From Asterias rubens (Eukaryota), in assembly GCF_902459465.1 (NCBI RefSeq), contig NC_047064.1, forward strand, positions 6,758,001 through 6,822,000: DNA of 64,000 bases. The letters run 5' to 3'. Below, piece by piece: positions 3,726 to 46,110 of the stretch (position 1 is the stretch's first letter; each line of letters begins with the position of its first letter). The translations under genes and the position numbers were made by a program. The notes under the pieces were generated by a model. It saw nothing but the letters and a program-made list of their open reading frames with translations, made no database searches and was not told where the DNA came from.

Positions 3726-4155
3726 AGGTTGACAAGAACTAATCTATGACCATACCTTTAAGAGAGAATCGTGATTGTTTGAATCATGGTTAAACCACGC
3801 AACCCACTCTTGGGGGCCAAACATACCAGTCTTATCTAAGTCAAAACATTGACTTGTTTTGAGTAACTTTAGACTGAAAGAATTGGATTAACCTGGGTGG
3901 GGTGGGAAGGAGGTCAAAGGTTATGGGTATTATTCTTGTTAAATCTGATGATCATCTGTCGGTGAAGTATTGAAAAATAATCAATATATTGGATAGGAAA
4001 AACTATAAATAAATAGTAAACTTGCGGGTAAAACTTTGAGTAAATCTCTTTTGAAGGAGTGGTGGCTCTGAAAAGAGCCGGTTTGGTCTTGACATTTCGC
4101 ACAGTATACTCTGCTCGTCTTCAAGAGAATGCTGGACTACTGGTGGTGGTAGAGC

Positions 4156-6552: not shown

Positions 6553-6904
6553 TTCCAGTTCCTACCAGTCAAAGGGATTTATATGGTCCATGCCGAATGA
6601 ATATCAGAGTGCTTTTATTGAATAGCGCCCTCTTGTGGTGATTTTGTGAAGTTGCACACAAGGATTCCACTCATAGAATTGTCTGAGAAAAGATTTTGTC
6701 TACAGAATGTGTCTGTGGCTGTCAAAGGAGCTGACAGCGACTTGATATTTTTTTTGAAGGTTTAGGGGGTTTCCCAAATGTGTAACTTTTTGACATTGCC
6801 TTCTCTGTTTTTCCACAGAGATCGCCCTCTTTTGGTTTCACTAATATATTACTTGTTGTTATAATTACTACCTTGAAAGTCTTTTGTGTTTCTAACCTAT
6901 TGTG

Positions 6905-7288
6905 GGTAAAGGCCCCGGACATGTTTGGTAATTGTCAAAGACCAGTATTCTCACTGGGTGTATCCCAACGTGTGCATAAAATAATAAATCTGTGAACATT
7001 TGGACACAGTTGGTCATCAAAGATGCAATGAGAACAAAGAAAGAAAAAAAAAAACACCCTTGCTGCACAAATTTGTGTGTTTTCAGATGCCCAATAAAAG
7101 GCTTTGACCTGACGTCTTTTAATATTTGAGTTTGAAAATACCTCTTTCTCAAAAAACTATGTTACTTCGAAGGGAGCTGTTCTCACAATGTTTTATACTA
7201 CCCAACAACTATCTTTTACTTGTAACCAAGTAAGTTTTTATACTAACAATTATTTTGAGTAATTACCAAAAGTGTCCAGTGCCTTTAA
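6905..7288. mobile_element. MITE family A
   Basis: taaaggccccggacatgtttggtaattgtc ... aattaccaaaagtgtccagtgcctttaa. Confidence 0.85.
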
Positions 7289-7439
7289 ATCAGCCCCTCC
7301 CCACCCCCTTCCTTGTTCATCCCTTGACTTTCTGCCACTTTTTTTTTCATTTGAATCCACTTGACTTCTTCTGTGGCACCAATATTCCTAGGTGTGTTGT
7401 GTTGTCAGTTGTGTTTTCATTTGGCCTCTGAGAAAGAGT

Positions 7440-8327
7440 TAGTGTTGGTGCAAGGCGTTTCTTGTTTTACTTTCACGCACACCGCGGCCAATTCACCAAC
7501 AGCACCCGCACCGACTCACCTGACTTTGTCCACACAACGCCCCGCAACAGCGCTCGGACCGACTCACCTGACTTTGTCCACACAACGCCCCGCAACAGCG
7601 CTCGGACCGACTCACCTGACTTAGTCCACACAACGCCCCGCAACAGCGCTCGGACCGACTCACCTGACTTTGTCCACACAACGCCCCGCAACAGCGCTCG
7701 GACCGACTCACCTGACTTTGTCCACACAACGCCCCGCAACAGCGCTCGGACCGACTCACCTGACTTTGTCCACACAACGCCCCGCAACAGCGCTCGGACC
7801 GACTCACCTGACTTAGTCCACACAACGCCCCGCAACAGCGCTCGGACCGACTCACCTGACTTAGTCCACACAACGCCCCGCAACAGCGCTCGGACCGACT
7901 CACCTGACTTAGTCCACACAACGCCCCGCAACAGCGCTCGGACCGACTCACCTGACTTAGTCCACACAACGCCCCGCAACAGCGCTCGGACCGACTCACC
8001 TGACTTAGTCCACACAACGCCCCGCAACAGCGCTCGGACCGACTCACCTGACTTAGTCCACACAACGCCCCGCAACAGCGCTCGGACCGACTCACCTGAC
8101 TTAGTCCACACAACGCCCCGCAACAGCGCTCGGACCGACTCACCTGACTTAGTCCACACAACGCCCCGCAACAGCGCTCGGACCGACTCACCTGACTTAG
8201 TCCACACAACGCCCCGCAACAGCGCTCGGACCGACTCACCTGACTTAGTCCACACAACGCCCCGCTGTTGGTGAATTGGTTGCGGTGTGCGTGAAAGGAA
8301 AACAAGAAACGTCTTGCACCAAGACTA
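7440..8327. mobile_element. Non-autonomous TIR element (62-bp TIRs, probable TA TSD) enclosing a 48-bp tandem array
   Basis: 7442-7503 is the reverse complement of 8264-8325 with 5 mismatches. TA at 7440-7441 and 8326-8327. Confidence 0.9.
7510..8265. repeat. 48-bp minisatellite, 15 full copies plus 1 partial
   Basis: Unit accgactcacctgactt(t/a)gtccacacaacgccccgcaacagcgctcgg starts at 7510, 7558 ... 8230. Only one variable site seen. Confidence 0.97.
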
Positions 8328-10514
8328 AGAAAGACTCTGGTAGGCTAGGGTGGAAATGTCAGACCATTAAAGGGTTTAAGTTCCTTTTGAAGATCAATTT
8401 TTTTTGCCATGACAATGACATAAATCCCTGTGAACGAGGATGTATGTAAAATAATTTACCTGTAGACTAATCAGCTTCATTGGTCGCCAAGGTTTTAAAA
8501 AAAAAAGTGAGAATAATCACAGAGCAATGTTTTCAAAAGAGTCGTGTAAATCAATTGAACATCCTTACATAATTTTCATAGATTTGTAGAGTCGACATTG
8601 CTCTGTTCCATTCTCATTCGTATAATAGCTGCACTATATATAAGGATGCAAGGAAGGAAGATGCCTGAAGGGTTTGTCTAGTCAACACTGTAAGGTCAAA
8701 TTGGCCTCTCAAGATAACCCCCCCCCCCCCCCAAATGGAAGTAAAATCAAAAGTTGTGTGCATGTGTCAATCAGGGATGTGATTTCTACATTTGTTACCC
8801 TACCCCCCCCCCCATGAAAAAAAAGAAATAAAGAAAGAAGGGGGGGAAAAAGGAGAACAAAAAAATTGTCAAGATCTTTAAATGTTGTTATAATTAAGAT
8901 TAAACTAACAAACTTGAAGATAAATCCATAGAAAGCCCAAGATTAAAGAGTAGGGCTTTTAAAACCAAAGATACAAGGCTTCACACTTTGCGCTCATGGT
9001 TCAGGTTATTATGTCAACAGCCTATCACAACCCTGATTATATGCATTGTTCATAGTACACCTTCCTGCCCAACACATCATTCATGGGAATGAGTTTTCAC
9101 TCCTCACTCCTCGACTCCCCACGCCATTTATGTATCTCACCCGCTGTCTTTATCGTGACAATATCAAGATTCAAAACTGCTTGAGTTTTTATAATTTCCC
9201 CTGAAGTTGCACATCACCTGTGACACTAGCCTTGTGTGACAAGTTGTTAATTGTTTGTCGCGATGATAGCGTAACAGCTCTCACGCGACTATACACTCAT
9301 GAGCAGCAAGGCTGACTGTTCTCTGCTGTTCTTGCAAGACTCCTGTTTTCTTGATACTGTTGCTCCTGAGGTCAGACTTTTACTCTTGAGAGTAAGGTCG
9401 TACGTCCAAAACAGCGGCTTCGTCTACAGCTGCAGCTAGATCACGCTTGTTTGCCTATTCTTCAACACTGGCAGCCGCGCTGATCTAGCCAAAGCTGTAG
9501 CCGAAGTCGCTGCTTCGGACACAGTCTTGGGCTAGTCAAGGAGGGGGAGCTATCATCTTGTCAAACATTTTGTCCACAAAGTAGCTCTGACACCGGTTTT
9601 GTTGTTTGTGTTTGAAAAAAAAACAGACCATTGGAATGAACAACTACCAACTGATATCTGAAAATGTAGTGTGTTTTGGTTTTTTGTTTTGTGCGTCTTG
9701 TTTTCACAAATTGTGAATTTTGTCCAGAGATTAGTTGCATTTTTACTTTCTACAGCTATTTTATTTGTTTTGTGATTTGACAAATTTCAACAATATAATC
9801 TGTTTGTTTTGGGATTGGGTATTTCACAATTTATTCAACATCTATTTTTAGTTTTGGGAAAAGGAACAGACTGTTAGATGATTTTTTTTTAGTTTGAATT
9901 CAAAAACAATATCGTGTTTCCGATTCTCGATTCAATGTTTAAAAAACAAAAAACATGAAATGCTCTATCAAGTTTCTAGAACTCCAAGAAGTTTAATACA
10001 GGTCACAGATAACGCTGCAGGGCGAAGAGAAAAATTGTTGTGTTCCACAAATATTTGGACTCCACTTGTTTTGTCTAAATGTTAGCAACTGGAGCACAAT
10101 TGTTTTGACAAATTCTATGACCTGGGGACTGGGGAGTTTATTTAACTTCTTATCATTTGTTTTTTAAATAAGATTTTTGTGTCCCTGGTAAGAGAGAAGT
10201 GGGGGGGGGGAGGGGATGATCCAGTTTTAGATGTTAAATTCCAAGTTTTTAGATGTCTATTTTTTTAAAGTGTACTTTAGCTGGTTTTCAATGAACACCC
10301 TTACACCCAAGAAATTAGTGCATAGATTTACAGGCAAGATTCTTTCTACTTTAATCTGATTTCTGTTTTTCTTTGATTGTTTTTTTTCCCCCTTTAGATA
10401 AAACAGCCAAATTGTTATGAATTAGCCTGGAAAGTATTTAAAGACCTGTGCGAGGTGTACATGTACATGTAGGTTATTACTCTATAAACGTGTCCTACTT
10501 TTTCCCAAGGACCA

Positions 10515-11971: not shown

Positions 11972-12200
11972 AATTTTGGTTTCTACCCATACACCGATGT
12001 GTGTTAGCACTGTATACTCAGTACTTTCCCGAGTCCTGTGAAAAAAATATCACAGGCATGTTACTCGGGTGGGATTCGAACCCACGACCCTTGCAATTCT
12101 AGAGCAGTGTCTTACCAACTAGACTACTGAGGTTGCCGGTAGCTAGAGGCAGTTCGAATCCTATGTTTTGGCAGCGGGTACTGCAACGATATAATAGATG
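11972..12200 (-). mobile_element. Best-preserved tRNA-derived SINE S1, with putative 11-bp TSD
   Basis: Minus strand carries an A-box-like TAGTCTAGTTGG and a B-box GGTTCGAATCCC (12071-12082). Flanked by the direct repeat ttacctatatt at 11961-11971 and 12201-12211. Confidence 0.85.
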
Positions 12201-13559: not shown

Positions 13560-14380
13560 GATTTATGTACCCATATTCTGATGTGTATGTAAAGCACTGC
13601 ATCATGAAGCACTGTATACTTGGTACTTTCGTGAGTTCTGTGAAAAAAATCTACAGGCATTCTACTTGGGTGGGATTTGAACCCATGCTCTTTGCCATTT
13701 TAGATCTTACCACTAGATCACCGAGAGTGGACCTTATTTCTTATAATTTTGTCGAAGATTGGCTTTCTACCCATACATTAAAATGTTTGTAAAGCACTCA
13801 CTGTATACTTGGTAATTACCTGAGTCCCTGTGGAAAACAAAGTCTACAGGCGTTCTACTTGGTGGGATTCGATCCCATGCCCTTTGCCACTGTTGAGCAG
13901 ATATCTAACCACTAGACCACCGAGAGTGGAACTCGTTTTTCATACATTACTTTTGTAGGAAATTGGCTTTTTACCTGTGTGTAAAGCACTTTATTCTCAG
14001 TACTTCCCTGAGTGGTAAAAACAATATATACACAGGCATTCTACTTTGATGGGATTGGAACCTCGTGCCCTTTGCCATTGTAGAGCAGATATTTTACCAA
14101 TAGACCAGCGAGAGTGGAACTCTTTTTTCATACATTACTTTTGTTGGGGATTGGTCTTACCCATACCCTGAGTTGTGTAAATCACTGCATACTGAATACT
14201 TTCCTGGGTCCTGTGAAGTAACAAATTCATAGGCATTCTGCCTGGGTGGGATTCGAACCCATGCCCTTTGCCCTTGTCGTCAGATATCTTACCACTAGAC
14301 CACCGGGAGTGGAACTAGTTTCTCATAATTTTGTCGGAGATTGGCTTTTTACCCATACATTAAAATGTGTGTAAAGCTTT
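13560..14380 (-). repeat. Head-to-tail array of about 195-bp SINE-S1-like units (4 full plus 1 partial)
   Basis: tacc(cata) anchors at 13568, 13768, 13972, 14158 and 14350. B-boxes at 13672, 13864, 14051 and 14248. Confidence 0.88.
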
Positions 14381-15162: not shown

Positions 15163-15520
15163 TCTTGATGACTTTGGTGATTTTGTTGTTTCTTGAGGAC
15201 TTTGGTGAATTTGTTGTTTCTTGAGGACTTATTTGAATTTGTTGTTTCTGGAGGACTTTTGTGAACTTGTTGTTTCTTGATGACTTTTGTGAATTTGTTG
15301 TTTCTTGATGACTTATGTGAATTTGTTGTTTCTTGATGACTTTTGTAGTTTCTTGAGGCGACTTACGTGATTTTGTAGTTTCTTGAGGACTTATGTAAAT
15401 TTTTTGTTTCTGGAGGACTTTTGTGAATTAGTTGTTCCATGAAGACTTTCGTGTGTTTGTTGTTCCTTGATGAATTTTGTGGAATTTTTGTTTTCTTAAT
15501 GACTTTCATGAATTTGTTGT
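15163..15520. repeat. 28-bp minisatellite (ttgttgtttcttgaggacttttgtgaat-like), about 13 copies
   Basis: tcttga anchor at 15163, 15191, 15219, 15247, 15275, 15303 and 15331, then degenerating. Confidence 0.9.
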
Positions 15521-18378: not shown

Positions 18379-19440
18379 AAGTCACATGTACTTCCTCTGA
18401 TATGACGACTGATTTATTTATTCTCGTATTCTTTAACAGCACTCACTGTTATGAAGCTTGTGATTGTAACTGTATTGTCAGGAGCTAACATTGAGAAATT
18501 GTAAACAAATTAATACAAAATTTGCTGGGACGGTTTTTAACAAAAAATATAAAAATATTGTCTCATGAAGTCACATCATGTACTTCCTCCTCCTTAGTAA
18601 TTTGACAACTTATTTTTTTTTACCTATAGTACTCTCTATCATCTTTGAGATGTACCATGCAGATTTATCACTCTCTGTTGTGAAGTTTGTGATTTTAATT
18701 GTATTGTTAGGAGCCCACATTGAGAAAATGTCAAGAAATCAATACAAAATTGGCTGGGAAGATTTTGGAAAAAAAGAGAAATAATATTGTCTCGTTAAGT
18801 CACATCATGTACTTTCCTTGTTATTATGACGATTTTGTATCTCTTGTACTCTCTATCATCTTTGAGATGTACCTTGCACATTCAGCACTCTCTGTTTTGA
18901 AGTTTGTGATTTTAATTGTATTGTTAGGAGCCAACATTGAGAAAATGTCAAGAAATCAATACAAGTTGGCTGAGAAGGTTTTTGAAAAAAATAAAAATAA
19001 TATTGTCTCTTTTAAGTCACATGTATTTCCTCCTTCTCGATAATATGACAACTTATTTTTTTCCTCATGTATTCTCTATCGTCTCTCAGAGGTACCTCGC
19101 AGATAGCACTCTTTGTTTTGAAGCTTTTGATTTTAATTGTATTGTTAGGAGCTAAAATTGGGAAAATGGCAAAAAAGTAATAAAAAAAATCAGAGAAGAT
19201 ATTTTTTTTAAATGAGATAATATTGTCTCATTAAGTCAAATCATGTACTTCCTCGTTATTACGACAATCTTTTCTTGCTCGTATTTTCTATCATTTCTGA
19301 GAGGTCAGCATTGATTTAGCACTCACTTTTTTTAAGCTTGTGATTTTATTTGTACTGTAAAGAGCAAACATTGAGAAAATGTCAACACCTAAACAAAATA
19401 TGCTGAGAAGCTATTGAAAAAAGGAGAGATAATAATGTGA
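18379..19440. repeat. About 220-bp degenerate tandem repeat, 5 copies
   Basis: aagtca(c/a)a anchor at 18379, 18568, 18797, 19014 and 19233, with shared ttgtgattttaattgtattgttaggagc. Confidence 0.88.
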
Positions 19441-27819: not shown

Positions 27820-28965
27820 ATGATGATGAAGGCTCAGCAGGAGCACAGGAAACAATTTTAGGATTTTGTTGTGATTTTTTTCTTCTTTTGATGGCCGGCA
27901 AAATTTGGTGGGAAAATTTTAGATCGTGTTTGGCAAAGTCACAATGATAAAAGTTACAATGAAACACATAAATTTCAAGCAGGGCCCAGTTAACAGCTGC
28001 TTAAGCACAAATGTTTCTTAGCACAACAAAGCAATATGCTTACAAGAATAAGCTGACCAGGTAAAATATCATGTCTCATGTGTGACTGGTGTTCTGATTA
28101 TTTTCGCTCGGATGATAAAGGCTCAATGGGAGCACAGGTAACAATTTGAGGATTTTTGTCTCTTTTTTTGCTTTGATGGCCAGACAAATTTGGTGGGGAA
28201 ATTTTTGATTGTGTTTTCAGAGTCAGACAGATAAGCTACAATCAATCAAACACATAATATTTCAACAAAGCCCAGTTTCATATAGCTGCTCAAGCACGAA
28301 AAGTTGCTAAGCAGAACAAAATTGTGCTTACTTACAAGAATAAGGTTACCAGCTAAAATATACCTGTCTCATATAGCTAAGCATGAAAAGTTGCTAAGCA
28401 TGAAAAGTTGCTAAGCATAACAAAATTGTGCTTACTTACAAGAATAAGGTTACCGGCTAAAATATACCTGTCTCACATGAAAAGTTGCTAAGCACAACAA
28501 AATTGTGCTTACTTACAAGAATAAGGTTACCGGCTAAAATATACCTGTCTCACATGAAAAGTTGCTAAGCACAACAAAATTGTGCTTACTTACAAGAATA
28601 AGGTTACCGGCTAAAATATACCTGTCTCATGTACAATCTGTGACTGGTAACAGGAGCACAGGAAACAATTATAAGATTTTTTGCTATTTTGCTTTTGGTG
28701 GCCGACAAAGTTTGGTGGGAAAAGATTGTTTAGATTGTTGATTGCAGTTTGCCGATACATACAGTCGAACACACTATAAATTGCACAGGAATACAAATGA
28801 TATCACATTGCACAAGAAGTGACTACAAAGGATGATACACAAAAATCAAACGTGTGTTTCCTATGTGGTCCTATAAAAGAATTGTTTTAAAGATAAATTT
28901 CAAGCAGGGCCAAGTTTCATATAGATAGCTGCTTAATAAGCACAAAAGGTTGCTTAGCTCAACAA
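27820..28965. repeat. Three-fold local duplication of a unique segment plus the left half of a Harbinger-like MITE, with an internal 77-bp array
   Basis: ggagcacagg(a/t)aacaatt...tttggtggg at about 27841, 28130 and 28653. taaggttacc at 28341, 28445, 28522 and 28599. Confidence 0.8.
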
Positions 28966-45439: not shown

Positions 45440-46110
45440 ACGCCCCCCCCCCCCCCTCTGACGAGATAAATGAAACGCAGCAGAATCCTGGTTCATGTTT
45501 TAGCAGTCCACATTGTTCTCAAGAAGAACAAAAACAAACAAATTATTTTCAGTAAGAAATTTTCAGTTTCACTTTTGTCTTAGGTTGTTTTAAATGATAC
45601 CCCTCCCCTCGATGAGATAACTGAAACACACAAAGCATGATGCTGATTCATGTTTTAAATATAATTATTTCAACAGTCGACATAATTCAAAGAAGACAAA
45701 CAAATTATTTTCAGTAAAAAAAATTCAGTTTCATTTTTTTCCCCTTAGGTTGTCTTAAATGATACCCCCCCCCCTCCCCTCGCTAAGATAACTGAAACCC
45801 AAAAAGAGAATGCTGATTCATGGCTTAGATATGATTCAAACAGTCCACATTATTCTCAAGAAGATTTAAGACAAGCAAATTATTTTCAAGAAGAATTTTT
45901 ACAATTTCATTTTTTTTTTCTTGGGCTGTCTTAAATGATACCAACCCTCGATGAGATAAAGGAAACATTGAAAGCAGAAGGCTGAGTCATGTTTTTAGAT
46001 ATTTTTAAACAGTCCAAATTATTCTCAAAAAGAAACGAAGACAAACAAATTATTTTCAGTAATTATTTTCTCTTTTTTTCTTTCTTATGTCGTTTTTTTT
46101 AATGGTTTCC
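45440..46110. repeat. About 165-bp degenerate tandem repeat, 4 copies
   Basis: (g/a)agataa anchor at 45463, 45614, 45785 and 45953, with shared acaa(a)caaattattttca. Confidence 0.88.

What the first reader, a model, noticed from the sequence alone, without database searches (positions are those of the whole stretch)
7440..8327. TIR element whose centre has amplified into a near-perfect 16 x 48-bp GC-rich array
62-bp TIRs with 5 mismatches and TA flanks enclose 48-bp units that differ at only one site (T in units 1, 2 and 4-6; A in unit 3 and units 7-16). Each unit contains caacagc, the inner end of the left TIR, plus the core, so the array looks like repeated duplication of the whole interior of a MITE of about 165 bp. 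The array is far more homogeneous than the TIRs, implying expansion or homogenisation well after insertion. The right TIR ends in its own mini-hairpin (GTCTTG-CAC-CAAGAC, 8311-8325). The unit is 30/48 GC with 5 CpGs, so it creates a CpG island of about 80 CpGs in AT-rich DNA. This may be a MITE-seeded minisatellite caught at birth, or a family that carries variable arrays.
Basis: partly seen in the sequence, partly recalled or inferred. Interest (0 to 1): 0.7.

Follow-up and report, generated by a model that had tools for sequence, protein, structure and literature searches.

The report
Minisatellite grown inside one starfish MITE
One old copy of a very abundant small jumping gene in a marine animal genome (probably a starfish) has had its 48-base middle piece copied head to tail 16 times; this is a real but ordinary case of a transposon seeding a tandem repeat.

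Summary
Window 7440-8327 is an inverted-repeat element (64-nt arms, 5 mismatches) enclosing 16 x 48 bp at 99% identity, with 79 CpGs.

Two details are wrong. Unit 1 differs at three further sites. TA is not the target duplication: TAG...CTA are the element's own ends, and the true duplication is 9 bp (AGAAAGAGT / AGAAAGACT).

- **Family:** about 1,500 ends genome-wide. The usual copy is a ~200-bp near-perfect palindrome. There are also 1.5-kb and 4.3-kb non-coding relatives. No transposase partner was found, so the family is Mutator- or Merlin-like by duplication length only.
- **Origin of the unit:** the 48-bp unit is the inner part of the left arm. The window copy lacks the inner right arm.
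- **Sibling copy:** an independent insertion on another chromosome shares that deletion joint but has one unit, so a ~168-bp asymmetric form transposed first and the array grew later.
- **Uniqueness:** the unit-to-unit joint occurs 15 times in the genome, all here.
- **Age:** no private changes in 720 bp against about 28 expected from arm decay, so the array is much younger than the insertion.

The unit count and any length polymorphism remain unverified. This kind is known, and this scan has already reported similar transposon-born arrays elsewhere in this genome.

The parts
7431..7439 (.). Left copy of the 9-bp target-site duplication, AGAAAGAGT. It has 1 change against the right copy.
   Evidence: 9-bp duplications occur in more than twelve other family copies. 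A weak paralogous empty site has AGGAAGACT once.
7440..7503 (+). Left outer inverted-repeat arm, 64 nt, starting TAG. It has 5 changes from the family consensus, 3 of them private. The terminal mini-palindrome has decayed here.
7497..7544 (+). Unit 1, the divergent edge unit. Its 5' part ACCCGC is closer to the family consensus GCCCGC. It carries T at the variable site.
7545..8264 (+). Units 2-16: fifteen 48-bp units identical except for T (units 2, 4-6) or A (units 3, 7-16) at position 31. All share the derived T10 and G13. There are 5 CpG per unit.
8265..8327 (-). Right outer inverted-repeat arm, 63 nt, ending CTA. G8264 is shared with the last unit. It has 2 private changes (CGCGG to CGCAA). 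The inner right arm found in normal copies is absent.
8311..8325 (.). Terminal mini-palindrome GTCTTG-CAC-CAAGAC, a family-wide feature of both ends.
8328..8336 (.). Right copy of the 9-bp target-site duplication, AGAAAGACT.

Best explanation
Window 7440-8327 is one old copy of a high-copy, non-autonomous DNA transposon family with 9-bp target-site duplications. The standard form of that family is a ~200-bp near-perfect palindrome with arms of about 106 nt.

This copy inserted as an asymmetric ~168-bp deletion form. It had the full left arm but only the outer 63 nt of the right arm. As single-stranded DNA that form makes a 64-bp stem with a 40-nt loop.

After insertion, the 48 bp made of the loop plus the top 7 nt of the stem was duplicated in tandem. 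This most likely happened by a replication error at the hairpin, with only 1 nt of microhomology (inferred).

One duplicate then picked up two substitutions. That duplicate was amplified to 15 further units by replication slippage and unequal sister-chromatid exchange, which also spread a T/A variant in blocks (inferred).

The result is a locus-specific, CpG-rich minisatellite of 769 bp. There is no evidence of function.
For: **Anatomy:**

**Family**
- 748 + 758 termini at 2 or fewer mismatches, reversed control 0.
- Perfect 9-bp duplications in L002, L003, L005, L015, L049, L056 and L061-L065.
- A normal copy folds as a 215-nt hairpin, -105 kcal/mol, z = -21.5.
- The alignment shows that the unit is arm positions 58-105.

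**Asymmetric precursor**
- The joint between the unit end and the right arm occurs at exactly two places in the genome: here and at G000:C20:4696129.
- The second copy is a 147-bp element with its own 9-bp duplication, different flanks and one unit. It is 91% identical to the collapsed window copy.
- The one-unit reconstruction folds into a 64-bp stem and a 40-nt loop.

**Locus-specific array**
- The unit-to-unit joint is found 15 times, all here, plus 3 matches elsewhere, each with 3 mismatches.
- No other locus holds two or more high-identity 48-bp units.

**Young array**
- 5 private changes in 127 nt of arms, and 1 in 18 nt of the target duplication.
- 0 private changes in 720 nt of units 2-16, where 28 are expected (P about 5e-13). 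All 75 CpGs of those units are intact.
- The edge unit is the divergent one, as expected under unequal exchange.

**Independent data**
- Logan contigs of run X1 match both element-flank joints exactly (7262-7485 and 8299-8468).
- A marine-metagenome run from another study (X3) holds an exact 78-bp contig that contains the unit-to-unit joint.

**Other copies:** small independent duplications occur in L043 (2.1 x 52 bp), L011 (2.9 x 116 bp) and L049 (two arm copies about 97 bp apart).
Against: - The count of 16 units rests on the assembly alone.
- In the Logan contigs the array-unit contigs have only about 2-2.4 times the depth of the unique flanks, where 11-16 times would be expected (X1: 372-416 against 132-171; X3: 11.9 against 5.63). 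The tool warns that contig depth is unreliable, and no raw long reads could be laid.
- The first duplication has only 1 nt of microhomology, so its mechanism is a guess.
- L043 duplicated a similar region in a fully palindromic copy, so the loop is not required.
- No autonomous partner was found, so the superfamily is open.
Confidence: 0.8

Rival explanations
1. The tandem structure is real, but its length in the assembly is wrong. It may be mis-sized or over-homogenised by assembly or polishing, or the assembly may show one long allele of a highly variable locus.
For: In two independent runs, X1 and X3, the depth of array-unit contigs is only about 2-2.4 times that of the flank contigs. No read-level check was possible.
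Against: - The assembly has no gaps (N) in the window.
- A 769-bp array is far shorter than typical long reads.
- The ordered T/A pattern and the distinct unit 1 are not what a collapsed or padded repeat looks like.
- The tool itself says that contig depth should not be used.
Confidence: 0.12
2. The array is a family-level module, as in pearl/DTC84-type tandem-repeat-containing MITEs. [quoted passage not shown]
For: A few other copies have small internal duplications: L043, L011 and L049. The subfamily with the 15-bp CCCGCACCGACTCAA doublet shows that duplications can be inherited.
Against: - The 48-bp joint is unique to this locus.
- About 45 sampled copies, and the sibling with the same deletion joint, have one unit.
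- The duplications in other copies have different periods and phases.
Confidence: 0.03
3. The array is kept because it does something. It could be a new unmethylated CpG island or regulatory element, a cluster of binding sites, or a coding repeat (48 bp = 16 codons, open in three frames).
For: It meets the sequence criteria of a CpG island: 769 bp, 62.5% GC, observed/expected 1.26. Open reading frames of 260-270 codons run through it.
Against: - Open frames follow trivially from a stop-free 48-bp unit.
- No Pfam-bearing open reading frame lies nearby.
- No run on record as RNA was listed for the stretch.
- The unit has no unusual fold (z = -0.5 and -1.7).
- Intact CpGs are explained by the array being young.
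Confidence: 0.04
4. It is a Stowaway-like (Tc1/mariner) MITE with a TA target site.
For: TA lies at both ends of the quoted interval.
Against: In every copy examined the 9 bases outside TAG...CTA are duplicated, and TA is part of the inverted repeat.
Confidence: 0.01

Closest known systems
Tandem-repeat-containing MITEs of the pearl / DTC84 type (bivalves, sea urchin, insects; Satovic & Plohl 2013, PMC3879986)
   Same: A small non-autonomous element with inverted repeats at its ends and a central block of tandem core repeats. Copy number changes are thought to involve palindromes or stem-loops.
   Different: In that type the array is a module of the whole family: up to about 5 units of about 160 bp, plus a microsatellite, with an AA target site and a possible Helitron link. 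Here the array is 16 x 48 bp, is unique to one copy, is made from the element's own arm, and the target duplication is 9 bp.
Xstir MITE-derived tandem arrays in Xenopus (Hikosaka & Kawahara 2004) and the miDNA4 MITE with an internal satellite (Scalvenzi & Pollet 2014), both as summarised in PMC12628747
   Same: Tandem repeats are derived from the internal sequence of a MITE. The proposed origin is a stem-loop during replication, and arrays grow inside the element.
   Different: Those gave genome-wide satellites or many copies with variable arrays. miDNA4 is Tc1/mariner-type and is proposed to have captured an existing repeat. Here there is a single locus, and the one-unit precursor form is still present elsewhere in the genome.
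Foldback-type elements that seed satellites, such as Tetris in Drosophila virilis (Dias et al. 2014, cited in PMC12628747)
   Same: The normal copy is almost entirely a long inverted repeat, and internal tandem repeats arise from the arm sequence.
   Different: Tetris arms carry arrays as a family feature and gave rise to a satellite. Here the normal arms have no arrays.
Mutator-like (MULE) and Merlin DNA transposons. This comparison rests on my own knowledge of their target-site lengths (MULE 9-10 bp, Merlin 8-9 bp).
   Same: A strict 9-bp target duplication, long inverted repeats (106-148 nt), and a gene fragment carried by the 4.3-kb relatives, as in Pack-MULEs.
   Different: No family member with a transposase was found. 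The MULE and Merlin-type (IS1595-like) transposase loci examined in this genome do not carry these ends.
Other transposon-born minisatellites already reported by this scan in the same genome (s1-150678, s1-150515, s1-150633)
   Same: An old mobile-element copy with a short internal or end piece copied head to tail, judged to be an ordinary local expansion.
   Different: Those are at different loci, and I could not check whether they belong to different element families. Here a one-unit sibling copy documents the state before expansion.

Membership tests
MITE (small non-autonomous terminal-inverted-repeat DNA transposon) | Terminal inverted repeats | tested here: met
   65-nt arms, 92% complementary. 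The consensus arm is about 106 nt.
MITE (small non-autonomous terminal-inverted-repeat DNA transposon) | Target-site duplication of fixed length at independent insertions | tested here: met
   9 bp in more than twelve copies with unrelated flanks. Here 8 of 9 match.
MITE (small non-autonomous terminal-inverted-repeat DNA transposon) | Small, non-coding and high in copy number | tested here: met
   Normal copies are 97-361 bp. There are 1506 termini in 417.6 Mb.
MITE (small non-autonomous terminal-inverted-repeat DNA transposon) | An autonomous relative that shares the ends and encodes the transposase | tested here: not met
   The 1.5-kb and 4.27-kb relatives, and the 8-10-kb copies with nested insertions, have no transposase reading frame. 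Absence from the assembly is not proven.
Tc1/mariner-derived (Stowaway-like) MITE | TA target-site duplication | tested here: not met
   TA is inside the inverted repeat. The duplication is 9 bp.
Mutator-like element (MULE) | 9-10-bp target-site duplication and long inverted repeats | tested here: met
   9 bp throughout, with inverted repeats of 106-148 nt.
Mutator-like element (MULE) | Ends shared with an element that encodes a MULE-domain transposase | tested here: not met
   Three PF10551 loci, one with a 1046-codon frame, have no family ends within about 8 kb.
Merlin | 8-9-bp target duplication, and ends shared with an IS1016/IS1595-like transposase element | tested here: inconclusive
   The duplication length fits. 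There are 16 PF12762 matches, including at least 8 near-identical 312-codon frames. The one locus fetched (L076) lacks these ends. The other loci were not fetched.
Minisatellite / VNTR | Head-to-tail units of 10-100 bp at a single locus | tested here: met
   16.0 x 48 bp, at a unique locus.
Minisatellite / VNTR | Length varies among individuals | tested here: inconclusive
   Only collapsed contigs were available. Their depth hints at fewer units in X1 and X3, but it is unreliable.
pearl/DTC84-type tandem-repeat-containing MITE family | The core-repeat array is a module present in most family members | tested here: not met
CpG island | At least 200 bp, at least 50% GC, CpG observed/expected at least 0.6 | tested here: met
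   769 bp, 62.5% GC, 1.26.
CpG island | Unmethylated, or with promoter activity | not testable with these tools
   No methylation data, and no RNA run listed that holds the stretch.

The most novel reading that the evidence does not exclude
The hairpin loop of an asymmetric foldback MITE is a preferred birthplace of minisatellites. The unit is exactly the 40-nt loop plus the top 7 nt of the stem, which would be a footprint of template switching at a stalled hairpin. The resulting array would be a hypervariable VNTR, perhaps about 2-16 units among individuals as the contig depths hint. It would also create a CpG island from nothing in CpG-poor DNA.
Probability: 0.12. Interest if true: 0.45.

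Novelty: new member of a known kind. Interest (0 to 1): 0.22.

Why it matters
It is a clean example of how a tandem repeat starts inside a transposon. The insertion, the pre-expansion form (a one-unit sibling copy), the first mutated duplicate and the later block expansions can all be read from the sequence.

It also characterises an abundant echinoderm MITE family that I have not matched to any named family: a 9-bp target duplication, palindromic copies, and recently mobile 4.3-kb relatives that carry a helicase fragment.

The principle that MITEs and other mobile elements seed mini- and satellite DNA is well established, and this scan has met it repeatedly in this genome. The value is therefore illustrative, and the locus may serve as a population marker. 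It is not conceptually new.

Tried and rejected
- **TA target site / Tc1-mariner affinity:** rejected by the 9-bp duplications.
- **Autonomous partner:** not found.
  - MULE (PF10551) loci L067-L075 carry no family ends.
  - One Merlin-type (PF12762) locus, L076, carries none either.
  - Pairs of ends 4.3-10 kb apart (L061, L062, L079, L080) are non-coding 4.27-kb elements, some with nested insertions.
- **Other arrays of the same unit:** none in this genome, and no match to the unit joint in JGI metagenome contigs.
- **Read-level check of array length and of an empty allele:** not possible.
- **Unit secondary structure:** nothing unusual.
- **Neighbouring genes:** no Pfam hit in the 9 open reading frames scanned, 76-153 codons long.
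- **Paralogous empty site:** only a weak one. It is a 73% paralogue of the left flank that carries AGGAAGACT once; the right-hand match is 12 nt at E = 0.8.
- **Organism:** not established by any tool here. The assembly size (417.6 Mb) and marine-metagenome holders fit the starfish Asterias rubens. That identification rests on my recollection of the assembly size and on unchecked notes from other agents of this scan.

Full report
**1. The observation**

The sequence at 7440-8327 is as described in outline.
- Tandem Repeats Finder reports 7497-8265, period 48, 16.0 copies, 99% matches, score 1482.
- The repeat finder reports one inverted pair, 7439-7503 and 8264-8328, 65 nt and 92% complementary. 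A direct comparison gives 60 of 65.
- Units 2-16 are identical except at position 31. It is T in units 2 and 4-6, and A in units 3 and 7-16.
- The array is 62.5% GC with 79 CpG and CpG observed/expected 1.26. The window is 37.5% GC, and its 2-kb flanks are at 0.22 and 0.44.
- The mini-palindrome at 8311-8325 is real.

**2. The target site is 9 bp, not TA**

A search of the window's own genome (G000: 417.6 Mb, 150 contigs; the window is C3:6758001-6822000) with the left arm found many copies.

In every complete copy examined, the 9 bases directly outside TAG...CTA are repeated.
- Short copies: GTGGTTGGC (L002), GGGTATACT (L003) and GTATGCACC (L005).
- 1.4-1.5-kb copies: ATCCAAACT (L015), ATGTTGACT (L056) and CCAACTGCA (L049).
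- Long and other copies: CTCCCTATA (L061), GTTTTGGAC (L062), ATTTAGAAT (L063), ACATTGGGC (L064) and AGGTTAGTC (L065).

At this locus the duplication is AGAAAGAGT (7431-7439) and AGAAAGACT (8328-8336), matching at 8 of 9. A distant paralogue of the left flank (G000:C10, L078) reads AGGAAGACT once, followed by CTG. This fits an empty site, but the right-hand match is only 12 nt.

**3. The family**

- The 22-nt terminus occurs 748 + 758 times at 2 or fewer mismatches, with none for the reversed control. Only this copy lies in the window.
- Pairs of ends among the first 100 places give sizes of 97-361 bp (14 pairs), 822 bp, about 1.46-1.50 kb (3 pairs), 4.27 kb and 5.25 kb.
- Aligned short copies show that the standard element is a near-perfect palindrome with arms of about 106 nt. 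L003 folds as a 215-nt hairpin at -105 kcal/mol, z = -21.5.
- The 1.5-kb relatives have at least 100 candidate loci.
- The 4.27-kb relatives have about 15 pairs. They are 97-100% alike, with 148-nt arms 99% alike.
- None of the relatives has a transposase frame. The longer ones are 4.27-kb elements with nested insertions.
- The 4.27-kb form carries a weak DEAD/DEAH helicase fragment (PF00270, E = 5.9e-5, below the cut-off).
- MULE-domain and IS1595/Merlin-type transposase genes exist in the genome. The loci I fetched lack these ends.

The superfamily stays open. By my knowledge of target-site lengths, a strict 9-bp duplication with long inverted repeats points to Mutator-like or Merlin elements.

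**4. What the unit is**

Against a consensus of 52 arms, the 48-bp unit corresponds to arm positions 58-105, the inner half of the left arm.

The window copy has no inner right arm. The last unit joins directly to the outer right arm (...CGCCCCG|CTGTTGGTG...). That joint occurs at exactly one other place in the genome, G000:C20:4696129, with one CpG-to-TpG change.

The second copy (L077, C20:4696060-4696206) has these properties:
- It is a 147-bp element with its own 9-bp duplication, (T/C)AGTTTCTG.
- Its flanks are unrelated to those of the window copy.
- It has a single unit.
- It is 91% identical to the collapsed window copy.

Built with one unit, the window element folds into a 64-bp stem with a 40-nt loop. 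The repeated unit is that loop plus the top 7 nt (CAACAGC) of the 5' side of the stem.

**5. The array is local and young**

- The unit-to-unit joint (21 nt, up to 3 mismatches) is found 15 times, all at this locus. The only other matches are 3 elsewhere, each with 3 mismatches.
- A three-unit query found no other locus with two or more high-identity units.
- The outer arms carry 5 private changes in 127 nt (3.9%), and the target duplication 1 in 18.
- At the arm rate, units 2-16 should hold about 28 private changes. They hold none (Poisson P about 5e-13), and all their CpGs are intact.
- All of units 2-16 share T10 and G13, which differ from both the family consensus and unit 1. They therefore descend from one mutated duplicate.
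- The edge unit stayed apart, as expected where unequal exchange homogenises the interior of an array.
- A at position 31 is the state in the consensus and the sibling, so T is derived. Its block pattern (TTATTT, then ten A) needs multi-unit duplications or exchanges.

**6. Mechanism**

- Shown: the insertion with a 9-bp duplication, the descent from an asymmetric deletion form, and an in-place amplification that is much younger than the insertion.
- Inferred: the first duplication arose from a replication error or template switch at the hairpin. The duplication ends share only 1 nt of microhomology.
- Inferred: later growth came by slippage and unequal sister-chromatid exchange between perfect 48-bp units.

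Models of this type have been proposed for MITE-derived arrays: Izsvak 1999 and Hikosaka & Kawahara 2004, as discussed in PMC3879986 and PMC12628747.

The hairpin loop is not a strict requirement. L043 duplicated an overlapping 52-bp region (2.1 copies) in a copy that keeps both arms. L011 has 2.9 copies of a 116-bp piece that extends about 260 bp beyond the element's end. L049 repeats an arm segment about 97 bp apart. The unit itself has no unusual fold.

**7. Independent data**

Every listed run offered only Logan contigs.
- Run X1 (organism A, 2019, possibly the assembly's own sample) has exact contigs across both element-flank joints: 7262-7485 and 8299-8468.
- Run X3 (a marine metagenome from another study) has an exact 78-bp contig, one period plus 30 nt, and so contains the unit joint.
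- Run X4 (labelled as another organism) has a contig from 8267 into the unique right flank with 6 differences in 449 nt, so the insertion is shared there.

The tandem structure is therefore not peculiar to this assembly. The number of units cannot be read from collapsed contigs.

The array contigs have only about 2-2.4 times the flank depth, where 11-16 times would be expected (X1: 372-416 against 132-171; X3: 11.9 against 5.63). This could mean shorter alleles in those samples, a composition bias, or a mis-sized array. The tool warns against using contig depth, and I could not resolve the point.

**8. Context and function**

- The window is gene-poor near the element, and 9 open reading frames of 76-153 codons gave no Pfam hit.
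- No run on record as RNA was listed for the stretch.
- The reading frames of 260-270 codons through the array follow trivially from a stop-free 48-bp unit.
- The array meets the sequence definition of a CpG island, but its intact CpGs are explained by its youth.

**9. Comparison and verdict**

Tandem repeats inside MITEs and foldback elements, and their growth into mini- or satellite DNA, are well documented. Examples are pearl/DTC84 (PMC3879986) and Xstir, miDNA4 and Tetris (reviewed in PMC12628747).

This case differs from the family-level arrays of pearl/DTC84 in three ways. The array is unique to one copy, it is made from the element's own arm, and a one-unit sibling is preserved.

Notes from other agents of this scan report similar transposon-born arrays elsewhere in this genome and name it a starfish, Asterias rubens (s1-150678, s1-150515, s1-150633, s1-150598). 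I did not verify those notes. I only saw an analogous 'end plus flank' array in L011.

It is a new member of a known kind and of modest interest.

Noticed in passing
L062 (G000:C2:22358916-22363189) and L061 (G000:C2:12122103-12127350): These are 4.27-kb non-coding relatives of the MITE family with 148-nt arms 99% alike. There are about 15 copies, 97-100% identical, so they were mobilised recently. They carry a helicase gene fragment: a weak PF00270 hit at L062:935-1237, a PTGFGKS motif, and a VDESHCVSKW motif in the next frame.
   Followed up: partly
L011 = G000:C7:15522151-15522493: Another copy of the family has 2.9 tandem copies of a 116-bp piece, 95% alike. The piece starts in the right arm and the array extends about 260 bp beyond the element's end.
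   Followed up: partly
L043 = G000:C16, locus positions 1483-1592: Independent 2.1 x 52-bp duplication of an overlapping inner-arm region in a 389-bp copy of the family.
   Followed up: no
G000:C3:13709491-13709886 (L076:2530-3465) and 15 other places: A Merlin-type (IS1595-like DDE, PF12762) transposase with at least 8 near-identical 312-codon open frames. This looks like a recently active DNA transposon family that is unrelated by its ends to the MITE studied here.
   Followed up: partly
G000:C5:16414866-16415153 (L069; frame at 6782-9919 of the joined L070+L073 sequence, i.e. running past the end of L070): A 1046-codon open frame with a MULE transposase domain (PF10551, 38 bits).
   Followed up: no
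window 4039-4084 (-): Rfam histone 3' stem-loop (RF00032, 36.6 bits), which suggests a replication-dependent histone gene just upstream on the minus strand.
   Followed up: no
window 12061-12133 (-) and 13835-14353: A tRNA gene (RF00005). Nearby is a 188-bp x 2.7 tandem array whose unit contains a tRNA-like segment (GGTGGGATTCGAACCC), which looks SINE-derived.
   Followed up: no
window about 6900-7300: An extremely abundant repeat just left of the element. Summed contig depth reaches 10-17 million in run X1, and it is also abundant in the runs labelled organisms B and C.
   Followed up: no
window 18437-19438, 15163-15520, 28399-28629, 45504-46062: Further tandem arrays in the window: 217 bp x 4.6, 28 bp x 13, 77 bp x 3.0 at 99%, and 170 bp x 3.3.
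   Followed up: no
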